IMG/VR virus record: IMGVR_UViG_3300050821_002957
Location: 186,001 to 250,000 of that record
DNA length: 64,000 bases
Reading direction: 5' to 3' (one strand)
Numbering within the stretch: the stretch's first letter is position 1; each line of letters begins with the position of its first letter. Under the pieces are notes generated by a model. The model worked only from the letters and a program-made list of their open reading frames with translations. It was not told the origin of the DNA and searched no databases. This document shows positions 19,621-50,444 of the stretch, piece after piece. Both the position numbers and the translations under genes were made by a program.

Positions 19621-20112
19621 ATGATCTGTAAGAAATGCCAAAATCGTATCCCTACTCGCATTGTAATCGAAGGCCGTCGCCGAAACCTTCAGCGCCGCAA
19701 GTATTGTTTAAAGTGCTCGCCATTCGGAGTCCACAACACTGGCGACCCACAAAAAATTTCTCTTCGAGGTACAGATCGAAAATGCGAAGGATGTATCAAC
19801 ATGATAGAACGTCGAAGACGATATTGTTCATCATGCATAAGCCGGATGCGCCGTCACAAAAGAAAACAGGTTGGTGTAGATGTGTTGGGAGGAAAATGTA
19901 TGGATTGCGGCTATAATCGATGTCTGGCTGCTCTCTCATTTCATCACCGTGATCCTTCAAAAAAGGAATTTACGATCAGTGAATTTTCGAGAACTACGAT
20001 GTCTCGATTCATTGCCGAAGTAAAGAAGTGTGATTTGGTTTGTGCTACATGCCACATCGAGAGGCACTATTTGAAAGATGGAGCCGAGTGGGAGAATCGA
20101 ACTCCCGAATGA
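19621..20112 (+). CDS. HNH endonuclease, homing type, overlapping the 3' end of a tRNA gene
   Basis: GGKCMDCGY..ALSFHHRDP..KCDLVCATCH. Confidence 0.88.
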   Translation: MICKKCQNRIPTRIVIEGRRRNLQRRKYCLKCSPFGVHNTGDPQKISLRGTDRKCEGCINMIERRRRYCSSCISRMRRHKRKQVGVDVLGGKCMDCGYNRCLAALSFHHRDPSKKEFTISEFSRTTMSRFIAEVKKCDLVCATCHIERHYLKDGAEWENRTPE

Positions 20113-20153
20113 TCGCTTTGCAGGCGAATACCTTACCACTTGGTTAACTCGGC
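20079..20153 (-). tRNA. tRNA-Cys(GCA)
   Basis: Acceptor GCCGAGT/ACTCGGC, T loop TTCGATT, anticodon loop CT-GCA-AA, encoded CCA. Confidence 0.93.
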
Positions 20154-47740: not shown

Positions 47741-48349
47741 TTATGCCGGAACGAAGACACCTTCATTGGCGATGATGTTCTTCATGATTGCCCGGAGACG
47801 ATCTGCCGCTGCGCCATACTTCTTTCCGAATGTGATGGCGGCTTGGCGAGATGATTCCCAGATTTCGATTTGCTTTTCGTTGACATGAGGATCGAGGTTC
47901 CAGACATTGGACGGCTGGAAATATCCTCTTCCTCGCTCAAAGGCATTTTCGATCAGGTACATTTGATGCATACTGAAGACAGCTTTGAGGCGGCGTACCA
48001 TATCGTCGGTTTCGATCATGTTGTTGTATTGTCCGTCCAGGCCGGAAAACTTGAACTTGTTTTCGAGAGTGACGACCGACATCAGACAGGCTCCCAGGCC
48101 ACAGACTTCACAATATGGCTGGAGTTTCTTGGCGGTAGCCTTTGAGTCTTTCTTGTTTGCTTCGATGATCTTTTCGACTTCGGTGTCTTCGTACTTCCCG
48201 TCTTTGTACTTGGTTTTGGGAGAGTACATTTTGACGAAGGCTTTCCCGGTTCGGATGGCTTTATATCTTTTGATCGACTTCAGCACATCTTTGGCGACGG
48301 CGATTGCACGTTCTTGTTTTGGGGTCAAAGTTTCATTAGTAGTAGGCAT
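47741..48349 (-). CDS. Hypothetical protein, leaderless
   Basis: TTGACA-17-TATCCT-7 nt-ATG. Confidence 0.75.
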   Translation of the reverse strand: MPTTNETLTPKQERAIAVAKDVLKSIKRYKAIRTGKAFVKMYSPKTKYKDGKYEDTEVEKIIEANKKDSKATAKKLQPYCEVCGLGACLMSVVTLENKFKFSGLDGQYNNMIETDDMVRRLKAVFSMHQMYLIENAFERGRGYFQPSNVWNLDPHVNEKQIEIWESSRQAAITFGKKYGAAADRLRAIMKNIIANEGVFVPA

Positions 48350-48479
48350 ATCGGGAAGGATACCTTAGTATTTTCTAGGTGTCAAGTTTTTGCGGCTGGC
48401 TCCGAACAAAAGGGACCCAATGAAGAAGGCAATGAAGAACTTTCCGATGGTTTTCATATTCTTGGAGTATAGCACTACC

Positions 48480-48700
48480 GGAGTCCCAAAGGCAGGGACC
48501 CTTTTCAGGATTTCTATAGGGTCAAATTTTTGGTCCGGGAAAATTTTGAGATTTTTGGGGGATGGGACCCTTTTCGGAAATTTTGCTGGGACTTTTTTCT
48601 GGTACGTCCTCGGAAACGGTAGGGTGGGGTTGTATAACGCCTGCGGATGGGAACCCTAACCCGGAAAACACTGTGTATTCGACCCCGTACCCCATGTGTT
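48480..48700. repeat. Noncoding GGGACCC / T-tract repeat region at a strand divergence point (origin- or pac-like)
   Basis: GGGACCCTTTTC at 48495 and 48564, variants at 48588 and 48650; AAATTTT tracts. Confidence 0.45.
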
Positions 48701-48835
48701 CTCAAGCACTTGCGTCGATGCGGCTCGGCGAGTCTACATATATTCAGGGTGATGTTCGTCTCTACCCATCCTCATGAGCGTGGCTGCTAACACGACGAGC
48801 GACAAGGCCACGCTCTAAAAAATCCTCAAAAATTA

Positions 48836-48877
48836 TTGATACATCTGTTGACATTGGATAGATGCATCTGCTAATCT
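48836..48877 (+). promoter_or_regulatory. Sigma70-type promoter with two palindrome copies
   Basis: TTGATACATCTG, TTGACA, TAGATGCATCTG in the spacer, TGnTAATCT. Confidence 0.75.
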
Positions 48878-48883
48878 AGTCAT

Positions 48884-49377
48884 GTAGTCAAGAGGTTCAA
48901 GACAAATAAACGAAAGGCGGCGAGATTGCAAAGCATGAGGAGGACATAGGCGCTCACTTGAGTATGCTGGTTTCAAATGATCGGCAACGAGAGCGACAAG
49001 AGCATTTGATGCAAGCCGTATGATGCTGGTGCGGCCCAAGCTGAAATCTAATCCGTGTTGCTCGGGTCATATGGCGAGACACGTCGGAAAGAATCCCAGC
49101 GTCATACACTCCAGCGACCAATGGTGTATGATTGGTTGATTGACGGATGATCGACGGCGAAGAGCGGACAAGTGCTGAGAGACGCCCTGAATCAGTAGCC
49201 GTAGATGTCACGAGGATTGCACAGCTTTTCATCCGGCTTGTGCGACTGCGACGAAAGAACGAGAGACGATATGCGCTAACTTGAATAACATACCCTGCTC
49301 GGGTTTAAGAGCCTTAAAATTTACTCCTTTCCTGAGGCGCTTTGCAGAGAAACACTGCGGAGCGCCTTATGTGTTTT
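48884..49377 (+). ncRNA. Putative large structured noncoding RNA of about 490 nt
   Basis: No ORF of 60 aa or more on +; many helices and pseudoknot-type pairings; 15-bp terminal hairpin 49333-49369. Confidence 0.6.
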
Positions 49378-49399
49378 GGGCCTGCTATATATTTGAAAC

Positions 49400-49624
49400 A
49401 TGCTGTACTGCGCCCGGTGTGACAGAAACTTTTTTGACGGCGAGGATATAACAATTCGCTCGGTGGCCGGAACTGAGCAAGCATATCATCACGGCTGTCA
49501 CGTTGACCTCTGCGACGAACTCAGAGAAGTTGCAAAGTCATTCGGCCCGACTTTTGACCAGGACGCCTACGTGCCTGTGATGTTTTTCTCCCGGACCTTT
49601 CGTGATTCGCAAATTGTTCACTAA
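49400..49624 (+). CDS. Small Cys/His Zn-binding protein
   Basis: CARC..YHHGC. Confidence 0.55.
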   Translation: MLYCARCDRNFFDGEDITIRSVAGTEQAYHHGCHVDLCDELREVAKSFGPTFDQDAYVPVMFFSRTFRDSQIVH

Positions 49625-49691
49625 CGAACACACCACTACAGGTTGCGCTTTGTGATATAAAGTTGACAGGTTTCTTGTAAGTTGTTCATAA

Positions 49692-50444
49692 ATGCCTCAA
49701 AACAGTTGCCATATGATGTGTTATCAGCAATTGGTTAGAAGTTGTGATAAACTGGGTTTCATGAAGAACGCCTATCGAATCGTCGGGACGGTCGTCTACA
49801 TCACGGTCGAAACCACCGGCAAGACAAAATTGAAAAAAGAAACGTTGATCGATGTCGCCGACCTGGACATGCTTCTCCATCATCCTGTGAAAACTTGGTA
49901 CGCTCATCTTGCAAAAGCTCCAGCCGGAAAATTTTATGTACTCGGCAAAGAATATTCTGCGGAGACACGAAGCTCGACAACACAAATGCTGCATCGTGTT
50001 CTCATGGGCGATCCCCGAAAAAAGTCTGGCAGAGCAATCGAGATTCATCACGTAGACAATGACGGCTTGAACAATCGGCACGAGAATATGGAGCGCAAAT
50101 CACATCGGGGAAACATTCGAGCGCATTGGCCAGAAAGAAACTGGGTGCCTTACGATGAGTCGCTTGATCGAATTGTCGTCTTCAAAAAACTTGTCCAGAT
50201 CGGCAAAGATATTCAGGCGACATATGAACTGACTCGCCAACAGCTATGGAAGATTCGCACAGGAAAAACATTGGAGTCAGCAGCGGCAAAGGCTTTTTGG
50301 TTCGCTGTGCTCGATGCATATCCTCAGTTGTTTCATAAAGAATGGAGAAGTGCGCCCTGGAAAGTCGGAGCGGCTGCAATCAAACAGTTTTGTGTTTCAA
50401 AAGAAAAAGGTGTGACGGCTGAAAAGTTGTCTGTTTCTTGGTAA
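49692..50444 (+). CDS. HNH homing endonuclease-like protein (start may be 49761)
   Basis: LIDVAD..MLHRVLMG..IHHVDNDGLNNRHEN. Confidence 0.8.
   Translation: MPQNSCHMMCYQQLVRSCDKLGFMKNAYRIVGTVVYITVETTGKTKLKKETLIDVADLDMLLHHPVKTWYAHLAKAPAGKFYVLGKEYSAETRSSTTQMLHRVLMGDPRKKSGRAIEIHHVDNDGLNNRHENMERKSHRGNIRAHWPERNWVPYDESLDRIVVFKKLVQIGKDIQATYELTRQQLWKIRTGKTLESAAAKAFWFAVLDAYPQLFHKEWRSAPWKVGAAAIKQFCVSKEKGVTAEKLSVSW

What the first reader, a model, noticed from the sequence alone, without database searches (positions are those of the whole stretch)
48836..49377. Large structured noncoding RNA behind the only doubly operated promoter
Seen: a near-consensus promoter with two palindrome copies drives about 490 nt with no substantial + ORF, ending in a 15-bp hairpin (49333-49369). 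Pairings found by eye: 48973-79/49003-09; 49018-29/49096-107 (12 bp); 49054-64/49075-83; 49115-22/49131-38; 49154-58/49198-202; 49217-25/49236-45. The loop TCATCCG (49229-35) complements CGGATGA (49144-50), suggesting a pseudoknot. GTGTATGA (49124-31) competes for 49102-09, suggesting a switch. I do not recognise it as tmRNA, RNase P, 6S, SRP or an intron. Inference: an unclassified phage RNA acting as scaffold, sponge, ribozyme or replication primer.
Basis: partly seen in the sequence, partly recalled or inferred. Interest (0 to 1): 0.75.

Follow-up and report, generated by a model that had tools for sequence, protein, structure and literature searches.

The report
Conserved noncoding RNA gene in jumbo phage
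A roughly 490-base stretch of a 405-kb T4-like soil phage, with its own regulated promoter and terminator but no protein-coding capacity, is conserved in five other metagenomic phage contigs with compensatory base-pair changes, so it is most likely a previously undescribed phage noncoding RNA whose function is still unknown.

Summary
Window 48837-49377 has a sigma-70-type promoter of a 17-member phage promoter class, a perfect palindrome in its spacer, about 490 nt with no coding signal, and a 15-bp terminator.

Folding energy is no better than for shuffled sequence (z -0.71). No Rfam family matches. One soil metatranscriptome showed no transcript.

Comparative data decide the case. Five other phage contigs carry a collinear homologue (G001, L151, L152, L153, L154). 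The flanking proteins of the most distant one, G001, have no homologues in this genome. Against L151 the RNA has identical runs of 25, 21 and 20 nt. The neighbouring gene has 52% identity at third codon positions and a longest identical run of 16 nt.

Several helices covary:
- a new 5-bp helix, Pc, paired in all six members with four different arm pairs;
- the hairpin with the invariant UCAUCC loop;
- the terminator.

His 48973/49003 helix is not conserved.

Verdict: a real, unclassified, partly structured phage RNA family. Function is unknown. I favour a trans-acting RNA. A long regulatory leader is the main rival.

The parts
48470..48700 (+). Second conserved noncoding element (E1). It has repeats of GGATGG(G/T)ACC(C)TTTT and a core GGTAGGGTGGGGTTGTATAAC..GGATGGGAACCC..AAAACACTGTG. 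It is separate from the RNA.
   Evidence: Three of the genome's five GGGACCC copies lie here. It is conserved in G001 at a different place (82% over 54 nt) and in L151. A three-way alignment gives mostly invariant pairs.
48778..48816 (+). Hairpin GAGCGTGGC..GCCACGCTC upstream of the promoter. It is probably the relic terminator of a lost upstream gene.
   Evidence: Local z is -2.6. It is homologous to the sequence just after the stop codon of the DUF7574 gene in G001, L138 and L140.
48837..48846 (+). Upstream promoter-class motif TGATACATCT, one base before the -35. Its centre lies near -41.5.
   Evidence: The consensus AGATACATCT sits at a fixed position in 17 promoters. It is conserved in L151, L153 and L152.
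48848..48853 (+). -35 hexamer TTGACA.
48860..48869 (+). Perfect palindrome AGATGCATCT inside the 18-nt spacer. It is a presumed operator.
   Evidence: There are 8 copies against 0.44 expected. It is kept in L151 (AGATGTATCT), half kept in L153 and lost in L152.
48872..48877 (+). -10 hexamer TAATCT.
   Evidence: The same hexamer is used by the class member at genome 11089. The homologues have TACGCT, TATGCT and TATGAT at the same spacing.
48884..49377 (+). Predicted noncoding transcript of about 490 nt. The start is inferred from the -10 position and the end from the terminator.
   Evidence: No coding signal. Collinear homologues. The ATG-TAG at 48882-48887 is not conserved in L151.
48907..48966 (+). 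5' conserved block: GAAAGGCGGCGAGATTG.AAAGCATGAGGAGGA..TAGGCGCTC..TTGAGT.
   Evidence: Identical runs of 21 and 15 nt with L151. Also found in L153. CATGAGGAGG is present in L152.
49015..49035 (+). Helix Pc: GCCGU (49015-19) pairs with GCGGC (49031-35). It sits between the invariant GCAAG and CCAAG.
   Evidence: 5 of 5 pairs in five members, with four different arm pairs. In L154 the script took the wrong GCAAG; I read GGCGT/ACGCC from its A13 row.
49025..49054 (+). Block c: GCTGGTGCGGCCCAAGCTGAAATCTAATCC. It is the most conserved stretch.
   Evidence: 90% identical to G001 over 30 nt. It is the core of model R1, which hits L151 and L154.
49054..49083 (+). Nested helices P2' (49054-58/49079-83) and P3 (49061-64/49075-78), with a CAUA-containing loop.
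   Evidence: The rows of A13 and the segment folds show CGUGU/ACACG changing to CGUGC/GCACG in L154 and CGAG/CUCG in L151. CUCG/CGAG changes to CCUG/CAGG in G001.
49083..49094 (+). Block d: GTCGGAAAGAAT.
   Evidence: Conserved in G001, L151 and L154, with a variant in L152.
49144..49150 (+). CGGATGA, complementary to the loop of hairpin f. It is a candidate pseudoknot or kissing partner.
   Evidence: GGATGA occurs exactly once in own, L151, L153 and G001, 81-114 nt upstream of TCATCC.
49217..49245 (+). Hairpin f, with the invariant loop UCAUCC.
   Evidence: The stems differ: own TTGCACA/TGTGCGA, L151 GTCACACA/TGTGTGAC, L153 GTCGCAC/GTGCGAC, G001 GGCTTGGTACCT/AGGTGCCAAGTC. The positional helix test gives 0 of 300 shuffles reaching the G001 score. 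Duplex energy matrix.
49259..49279 (+). Block g: GAGACGATATGCGCTAA.
   Evidence: ATGCGCTA is conserved in G001, L153 and L152. ATGCG is invariant in the five members aligned there.
49333..49377 (+). Intrinsic terminator: a 15-bp stem, a 7-nt loop and the tail TGTGTTTT.
   Evidence: It is conserved with compensatory changes in L151, L153 and G001. The RNAalifold column-shuffle z is -7.6 on the + strand against -4.1 on the - strand.

Best explanation
Window 48884-49377 (+) is a free-standing gene for a noncoding RNA of about 490 nt. It belongs to a family not described before.

Inferred steps:
- Host-type (sigma-70-like) RNA polymerase starts at a promoter of the phage's AGATACATCT-TTGACA class, which otherwise drives leaderless mRNAs for small proteins.
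- The factor that recognises the AGAT-NN-ATCT motif upstream of the -35 also finds a perfect copy inside the spacer here. It should therefore damp or time this promoter.
- Transcription stops at the 15-bp intrinsic terminator.

Shown by comparison:
- The RNA has a modular architecture. It consists of a purine-rich 5' block, helix Pa around a variable hairpin, helix Pc, a long conserved single-stranded block (GCCCAAGCUGAAAUCUAAUCC), nested helices P2'/P3, GGAAAGAAU, a GGAUGA element, hairpin f presenting UCAUCC, AUGCGCUAA and the terminator.

I infer that it acts in trans as an RNA. The invariant unpaired blocks and the UCAUCC/GGAUGA pair would be contact surfaces for a protein, another RNA or further copies of itself. 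The partner and the biological effect are not known.
For: (1) It is noncoding.
- No codon-usage signal in six frames.
- Random-level stop counts in own, L151 and G001.
- Indels of 2, 4 and 14 nt inside the conserved blocks.
- The ATG-TAG is not conserved.

(2) It is homologous across phages.
- A collinear anchor chain links own and G001, with z about 6 against dinucleotide shuffles.
- In 19.9 kb of the window, the only DNA matches to G001 are one coding stretch (66%) and the two noncoding patches (82% and 90%).
- None of G001's neighbouring ORFs has a homologue in this genome.
- Model R1 scores 51.7 bits on L151 and 66.7 bits on L154.
- L153 and L152 share the 5' block, block g and the promoter. 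L153 also shares the terminator.

(3) It is under purifying selection.
- Identical runs of 25, 21 and 20 nt with L151.
- The adjacent 74-aa gene has 52% third-position identity and a longest identical run of 16 nt.

(4) Helices covary.
- Pc is paired 5/5 in the five members scored, with four different arm pairs. Cross-combinations average 3.4 of 5. L154's arms were read from its A13 row.
- Hairpin f.
- P2'/P3.
- Terminator.
- RNAalifold on own+L151 gives z -2.63 on the + strand and -1.0 on the - strand.

(5) It is a transcription unit.
- The promoter class has 17 members. The promoter is conserved in four family members with the same 18-nt spacer.
- The terminator conservation is strand-specific.
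Against: - No transcript was seen. The one metatranscriptome that holds this phage has a single 256-nt contig on the neighbouring gene (49429-49684) and none on the RNA. A second run search listed no RNA run. Depth there was about 2, so this is weak evidence.
- Single-sequence folding is no more stable than shuffles in own (z -0.71) and G001 (z -0.57).
- RNAalifold on the MAFFT three-way alignment gives a slightly unfavourable covariation term.
- Most individual helices fail a positional test in G001.
- P1 core and P2 never vary.
- There are only six members. Four of them were found through the same neighbouring gene and are related by descent.
- G001 lacks the promoter motif.
- In L152-L154 a small ORF follows the RNA with no obvious promoter of its own. 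That fits a cis-acting leader as well as a trans-acting RNA.
Confidence: 0.6

Rival explanations
1. It is a long cis-acting leader or attenuator. The RNA would be the 5' untranslated part of an operon, and its terminator a regulated stop. Read-through would depend on a signal sensed by the conserved structure (riboswitch-like or antitermination-like) and would switch on the genes downstream.
For: - In five of six members the RNA lies upstream of, and on the same strand as, the 74-aa gene family.
- In L152, L153 and L154 a roughly 46-aa hydrophobic ORF starts within about 25-40 nt of the RNA's terminator, with no recognisable promoter between them.
- The terminator is the best conserved structure.
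Against: - The association with the 74-aa gene is an ascertainment effect, because four members were found through that gene.
- Two more distant homologues of the gene lack the RNA.
- In G001 the RNA follows a DUF7574 gene, and the next called genes converge on it, so nothing lies downstream to switch on.
- In own and L151 the 74-aa gene has its own conserved -10 (TATATATT) at the leaderless distance.
- No Rfam riboswitch or leader family matches.
Confidence: 0.2
2. It is a replication origin of the T4 R-loop type. The transcript from the early-class promoter would stay annealed to the template and prime leading-strand synthesis. The repeat element E1 next to it would be an iteron-like origin component.
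For: - In this genome the region is the switch point between a 22-gene minus-strand block and a 10-gene plus-strand block.
- T4 oriE, oriF and oriG lie at such points, oriE depends on an early promoter, and oriE has iterons (PMC3016281).
- The first 100 nt of the transcript are purine-rich, in the top 1% of genome windows.
- The E1 repeats lie adjacent.
Against: - There is no AT-rich unwinding element downstream of the promoter. GC is 0.48-0.56, above the genome mean.
- T4 origins share no sequence motifs (PMC3016281). Here collinear blocks and covarying hairpins are conserved along about 450 nt.
- In G001 the element has no promoter, lies between same-strand and convergent genes, and is 1.7 kb from E1.
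Confidence: 0.07
3. It is a decayed gene cassette. The promoter, the leaderless ATG and the terminator would be what is left of a small early gene whose reading frame has been destroyed.
For: - The ATG lies 28 nt from the -35, against 29 nt in 14 of 17 class members. It is followed at once by TAG.
- The region lies in a plastic neighbourhood with a free-standing HNH-like nuclease gene.
Against: - Stops are at random density in all frames and there is no residual codon bias.
- The ATG is not conserved in L151.
- The sequence is more conserved than synonymous sites of the neighbouring gene.
- The frame is broken by indels inside the conserved blocks, and the helices covary.
Confidence: 0.05

Closest known systems
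ROOL and GOLLD RNAs (large ornate RNAs of phages and prophages; Rfam; PMC12286853)
   Same: Encoded by phages, several hundred nucleotides long, noncoding and of unknown function. They have conserved long-range or loop contacts. In ROOL and GOLLD, contacts first read as tertiary turned out to be intermolecular kissing loops. That is a possible reading of UCAUCC/GGAUGA here.
   Different: No Rfam match at any threshold in three members. It is not next to a tRNA island; the only tRNA of the window is 29 kb away. Predicted structure is far less extensive and folding energy is at the shuffle level. Nothing is known about multimerisation.
Lambda PR'-tR' 6S transcript and other promoter-proximal terminated phage transcripts
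   Same: A strong phage promoter is followed after a few hundred nucleotides by an efficient intrinsic terminator, with genes beyond it on the same strand.
   Different: The lambda transcript is 194 nt and is a by-product of Q antitermination (my own knowledge). Here the body carries conserved blocks and covarying helices, and one member has no downstream genes.
T4 replication origins oriE, oriF and oriG (PMC3016281)
   Same: A T4-like phage, a site at a point of transcriptional divergence, an early-type promoter, and repeats nearby.
   Different: T4 origins share no sequence motifs, and the oriF/oriG primer RNAs come from MotA-dependent middle promoters (PMC3016281). That they run into an unwinding element is from my own knowledge. 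Here the sequence is conserved, the region is GC-rich, and the G001 copy is neither at a divergence point nor near E1.
phi29 pRNA
   Same: A phage-encoded RNA in which a hairpin loop is complementary to another unpaired segment of the same RNA. In pRNA that complementarity builds a ring of RNAs (my own knowledge).
   Different: pRNA is about 174 nt and is tied to the packaging motor of phi29-like podoviruses. No sequence or context similarity was found, and the comparison is an analogy only.

Membership tests
Any Rfam 15 family (including ROOL, GOLLD, OLE, HEARO, 6S, tmRNA, RNase P, SRP, group I/II introns, riboswitches) | Covariance-model match at or near the family's gathering score. | tested here: not met
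   At the gathering threshold the window has only a tRNA at 20082-20153. In E-value mode on 48700-49500, on 48200-48900, on the G001 loci and on L151, the only matches were eukaryotic snoRNA and lncRNA models at 13-20 bits with E of 0.36 or more.
ROOL / GOLLD | Location near tRNA islands in phages or prophages. | tested here: not met
   The single tRNA of the 64-kb window is 29 kb away.
CsrB/RsmZ-type protein sponge | Many GGA motifs, well above expectation, presented in loops. | tested here: not met
   GGA observed against expected: 7/11.0 (own), 7/11.6 (L151), 13/13.9 (G001).
T4-type R-loop origin | A promoter followed by an AT-rich DNA unwinding element. | tested here: not met
   GC is 0.43-0.56 over 48850-49250 against a genome mean of 0.46.
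T4-type R-loop origin | Origin activity (initiation of DNA synthesis, RNA-DNA hybrid). | not testable with these tools
   Needs infected cells. The phage is known only from metagenomes.
Regulated leader / attenuator | Downstream genes on the same strand that depend on read-through of the terminator. | tested here: inconclusive
   Such genes are present without a visible promoter in L152-L154. In own and L151 the next gene has its own -10. There are no downstream genes in G001.
Protein-coding gene or recent pseudogene | An open frame or residual codon bias, with the frame kept among homologues. | tested here: not met
   There are indels that are not multiples of three inside the conserved blocks.
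Structured RNA in general | Folding energy below that of shuffled sequence. | tested here: not met
   z is -0.71 (own) and -0.57 (G001). Only the terminator and, weakly, 48990-49109 stand out locally.
Structured RNA in general | Helices kept through compensatory changes among homologues. | tested here: met
   Pc, hairpin f, P2'/P3 and the terminator. The sample is small (six members). Several counts were read from sequence rather than from a structure-aware alignment.

The most novel reading that the evidence does not exclude
A new family of large modular phage RNAs that works as an RNA-only or RNA-protein assembly. The invariant UCAUCC loop and its GGAUGA partner would form an intermolecular contact, as the kissing loops of ROOL and GOLLD do. 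The long invariant single-stranded block would capture a host component early in infection. Dosage would be set by the operator inside its own promoter.
Probability: 0.2. Interest if true: 0.8.

Novelty: new variant of a known kind. Interest (0 to 1): 0.68.

Why it matters
Very few noncoding RNAs are known from T4-like or jumbo phages, and almost none have a known role. This is a self-contained RNA gene that moves between otherwise unrelated genomic contexts. It is kept more strictly than the neighbouring proteins and has its own promoter, with the class's recognition motif repeated inside the spacer.

It gives a small, well-defined object for experiment: a promoter, a roughly 490-nt RNA and a terminator. 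Tests can ask what such RNAs do, including whether phage RNAs other than ROOL and GOLLD form higher-order assemblies.

The promoter class found on the way implies that this phage makes mostly leaderless early mRNAs. That is of interest for phage gene-expression strategies in soil hosts.

Tried and rejected
- blastn of the region against 50,697 phage records found no match. tblastn and pattern searches with the two flanking proteins in the phage collection and IMG/VR also found nothing.
- Homologues of the left-flank 202-aa protein sit in unrelated contexts, or no DNA was available for them.
- The metagenome scan with the 74-aa protein returned only a second assembly of the same phage, 100% identical over 12.2 kb.
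- Exact-pattern scans with blocks of the RNA:
  - CCAAGCTGAAANCTAATCC and GCTGGTGNNNCCCAAGCTGAA each gave G001 plus one chance hit inside a coding region.
  - CCAAGCTGAA-gap-GGAAAGAAT gave 63 hits. All but G001 are unrelated coding sequences.
  - The 5'-block pattern gave nothing.
  - The genome-contig scan gave one intergenic 20-nt match in Fulvivirga with no other block. I judge it chance; about 4 are expected.
- Model R1 found only G001 in 50 T4-like IMG/VR records and no paralogue in the phage's own genome.
- Close relatives of G001's DUF7574 gene (L138, L139, L140) lack the RNA. Homology stops about 45 nt after the stop codon.
- I looked for complementarity of the RNA to the phage's own genes. 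There are two 16-nt matches, both in mid-gene, and I judge them chance.
- The 92-aa minus-strand ORF 48954-49232 has no Pfam hit and a negative coding score.
- The 74-aa ORFs next to the RNA in own and G001 are not homologous.
- MAFFT alignments could not be used for pair counting of Pc, f and P3, because gaps fell inside the arms. I used anchor-relative extraction in scripts instead.
- Structure prediction, fold search and complex prediction were not used. No protein claim depends on them.

Full report
**Setting.** The window is bases 186001-250000 of a 405,631-bp virus record, GC 46%. Hits to gp32, the gp2 DNA-end protector, baseplate hub and tail-tube proteins, and a 1430-aa protein with a glucosaminidase domain mark it as a T4-like jumbo phage. 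It comes from soil metagenomes. The finding lies in a 1.05-kb gene-free gap. To the left is a 22-gene minus-strand block ending at 48349. To the right is a plus-strand block that starts with a 74-aa ORF at 49400.

**Checking the observation.**
- The 15-bp hairpin 49333-49369 with a T-rich tail is picked up by the terminator scan.
- The palindrome AGATGCATCT occurs 8 times in the genome against 0.44 expected, nearly always at a promoter.
- There is no ORF above 45 aa on the + strand.
- No frame has a positive codon-usage score between 48560 and 49400, and stops are at random density.
- The amount of pairing is not above chance. The MFE z-score is -0.71 for the whole transcript.
- In 120-nt windows only three places stand out: the terminator (z about -3), a hairpin upstream of the promoter (z -2.6) and, weakly, 48990-49109 (z -1.8).
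- Rfam gives nothing.

**The promoter.** A self-BLAST of the gap showed that only the promoter-proximal 45 nt recur in the genome. Aligning those copies defines a class of 17 promoters: an A-rich tract, AGATACATCT, one base, TTGAC(A/T), 17-18 nt, then TANNNT.
- In 14 of the 17 an ATG lies exactly 29 nt after the -35, six bases after the -10, and opens an ORF of 39-214 codons. These are leaderless mRNAs.
- The finding's promoter is a member: TGATACATCT-G-TTGACA-N18-TAATCT.
- It is unusual in two ways. First, it has a second, perfect copy of the motif inside the spacer. One other member, at genome 357345, has an inverted copy there.
- Second, its ATG, 28 nt after the -35, is followed at once by TAG.
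- The motif is a palindrome of the form AGAT-NN-ATCT centred near -41.5. That is the position of a class II activator (inference). A copy in the spacer should then act negatively (inference).

**Transcript evidence.** Four public runs hold the sequence. In the one metatranscriptome, a single 256-nt contig covers 49429-49684 (the 74-aa gene) and nothing covers the candidate RNA. Depth is about 2. A second query restricted to the RNA listed no RNA run. This is weak negative evidence.

**First homologue (G001).** The nearest IMG/VR relative by gp32 (64% amino-acid identity) is a 53-kb contig, G001.
- A DNA search of that record with the gap gave two noncoding matches. Window 48628-48681 matched at 82%. 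Window 49025-49054, inside the candidate RNA, matched at 90%.
- With 19.9 kb of the window as query, these two patches and one coding stretch at 66% were the only matches.
- A chain of collinear exact matches links own 48775-49279 to G001 4523-3914 on its minus strand. Its score is about 6 standard deviations above dinucleotide shuffles.
- None of the ORFs around the G001 copy has a homologue in this genome.
- In G001 the element follows a DUF7574 gene. Closer relatives of that gene (L138, L139, L140) lack the element, and homology ends about 45 nt after the stop codon.
- The element therefore behaves as a self-contained module.

**More homologues.** A word-index search with the 74-aa neighbour found a 77%-identical protein on L151. 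An exhaustive HMMER search found more distant ones.
- L151 is syntenic with the whole gap, including both promoter motif copies, the RNA and the terminator.
- L153 has the promoter, the 5' block, GGATGA, hairpin f, block g and the terminator.
- L152 is a shorter version without e and f.
- L154 has the 5' half and domain B, then a terminator of its own.
- Model R1, built from own and G001, scores 51.7 bits on L151 and 66.7 bits on L154.
- Two more distant homologues of the 74-aa gene (L155, L156) lack the RNA.
- Fifty other T4-like IMG/VR records also lack it.

**Noncoding and under selection.** None of the members has a conserved ORF. Conserved blocks are interrupted by indels of 2, 4 and 14 nt. 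The ATG-TAG of this phage is absent in L151.

Between own and L151 the adjacent 74-aa gene is 72% identical in DNA. Identity is 52% at third codon positions, and the longest identical run is 16 nt. The RNA has identical runs of 25, 21, 20, 15 and 14 nt. Its conserved blocks are 72-75% identical, separated by variable stretches at 27-46%.

**Structure.** Thermodynamics alone gives no signal in own or G001. RNAalifold on the MAFFT three-way alignment is unconvincing, with a covariation term of +1.1. Column-shuffle tests on the reliable own-L151 alignment give the following:

| Region | z, + strand | z, - strand |
|---|---|---|
| Whole RNA | -2.63 | -1.0 |
| 49000-49119 | -2.25 | -0.17 |
| Terminator window | -7.6 | -4.1 |

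Specific helices are as follows.
- **Pc.** Five bases starting at the last G of the invariant GCAAG pair with the five bases before the invariant CCAAG. The script scored 5/5 in five members, with four different arm pairs: GCCGU/GCGGC, GGCGU/ACGCC, GUUGA/UCAGC and GGCAU/GUGCC. Cross-combinations average 3.4 of 5. For L154 the script picked the wrong GCAAG; I read its arms, GGCGU/ACGCC, from its A13 row.
- **Hairpin f.** The loop UCAUCC is invariant and the stems differ in all four members that have it. In a positional test none of 300 shuffles reached the G001 stem score. G001's arms pair poorly with the arms of the others.
- **P2'/P3.** It shows U-A to C-G in L154, CGAG/CUCG in L151 and CCUG/CAGG in G001.
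- **Terminator.** T-A changes to A-T in L151 and C-G to U-A in G001, where a 90-nt insertion sits in the loop.
- **Pa.** A further helix, CGCUC with GAGCG, encloses a hairpin of different sequence in each member.

- The 5' arm of the 12-bp stem lies in the loop of Pc. Only its GCUGG/CCAGC core is kept, without variation, in four members. L152 and L153 lack it.
- In its favour, L151 and L154 can extend the core with different sequences, which I read from the rows.
- Helix 48973/49003 loses its 5' arm in L151.
- GGAUGA and UCAUCC each occur exactly once, 81-114 nt apart, in own, L151, L153 and G001. The pair never varies. It is therefore compatible with a pseudoknot or an intermolecular contact but not proven.

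**Interpretation.** Four features point to a noncoding RNA gene:
- the promoter is conserved in four members;
- strand-specific conservation of the terminator, which five of the six members have;
- nucleotide-level selection is stronger than in the neighbouring gene;
- the helices covary.

The pseudogene reading is excluded by the same data. The R-loop origin reading fits the position in this genome and T4 precedent (PMC3016281). It does not fit the GC-rich body, the extended sequence and structure conservation, or the G001 context.

The leader/attenuator reading remains the serious rival. In L152-L154 a small hydrophobic ORF follows the terminator closely, with no visible promoter. Against it, own and L151 have a separate conserved -10 for the next gene, and G001 has no downstream genes.

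A CsrB-like sponge is unlikely, because GGA is not enriched. What the RNA binds or does cannot be told from sequence.

**Comparison with known systems.** The closest kind is the group of large phage and prophage RNAs of unknown function, ROOL and GOLLD. They form homo-oligomeric cages held by kissing loops (PMC12286853). This RNA is not a member: it has no covariance-model match, no tRNA neighbourhood and much less predicted structure. It is best described as a new, small family of phage noncoding RNAs with its own regulated promoter.

Noticed in passing
Whole genome. In the window: 3065, 3796, 30416 and 48837 (motif starts): There is a class of 17 promoters, AGATACATCT-N-TTGAC(A/T)-N17-TANNNT. 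In 14 of them an ATG lies six bases after the -10 and opens a 39-214-codon ORF. This phage therefore seems to express many small, presumably early, genes from leaderless mRNAs. Shine-Dalgarno motifs are rare upstream of its genes: AGGAG in 4% and GGAG in 10% of 278 starts.
   Followed up: partly
window 48470-48700: A second conserved noncoding element (E1) has repeats of GGATGG(G/T)ACC(C)TTTT and a nearly invariant core, GGTAGGGTGGGGTTGTATAAC...GGATGGGAACCC...AAAACAC. It is present in L151 in synteny, and in G001 1.7 kb away from the RNA. In both this phage and G001 it lies upstream of a gene on the opposite strand. Its function is unknown.
   Followed up: partly
whole genome: GGGACCC and GGGTCCC are strongly under-represented: 5 + 3 copies against about 17 expected of each. 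Three of the copies are clustered in E1. This may reflect avoidance of a GGWCC-type restriction site.
   Followed up: no
window 48365-48475 (-): A 36-aa ORF (from the MKT start: MKTIGKFFIAFFIGSLLFGASRKNLTPRKY) is hydrophobic and lies just upstream of the 202-aa gene on the same strand. It may be a small membrane protein. The promoter-like site 48385-48357 lies inside it.
   Followed up: no
window 49692-50444 (+); L151 1771-2205: A free-standing HNH-like nuclease ORF lies two genes downstream of the RNA. The Pfam HNH_3 hit is weak (E 0.004), and the start is probably at 49761 (MKNAYRIV). L151 has an Endonuclease_7 gene at the same place instead. This looks like a plastic region with exchangeable nuclease genes.
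   Followed up: no
L152 ~841-988, L153 777-917, L154 ~315-448: A conserved ORF of about 45-48 aa for a hydrophobic protein (for example MRVILKIDNSEDAEVVLALDLIQRICYVIMGLVAGYILSIADLYLS) lies between the RNA terminator and the 74-aa gene in three relatives. It is absent from this phage and from L151.
   Followed up: no
window 48760-48830; G001 4540-4475; L138, L140: The hairpin and about 20 nt before it are homologous to the 3' end and terminator region of the DUF7574 gene of G001. The local ORF 48562-48777 ends at the homologous stop codon, but this genome has no DUF7574 homologue. This suggests the RNA module arrived together with the end of that gene.
   Followed up: partly
genome 951 and 405065 (outside the window): The first and last promoters of the class, near the two contig ends, are followed by near-identical starts (…TATTCATGAGCG) and ORFs of 149 and 168 codons. 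These are either paralogues at both ends or a sign of terminal redundancy.
   Followed up: no
window 49400-49624 (+): The 74-aa protein (CxxC ... HHGC ... C) has at least 14 homologues in metagenomes and no Pfam family. One of them is on a 374,748-bp contig (L155), which may be another jumbo phage.
   Followed up: partly
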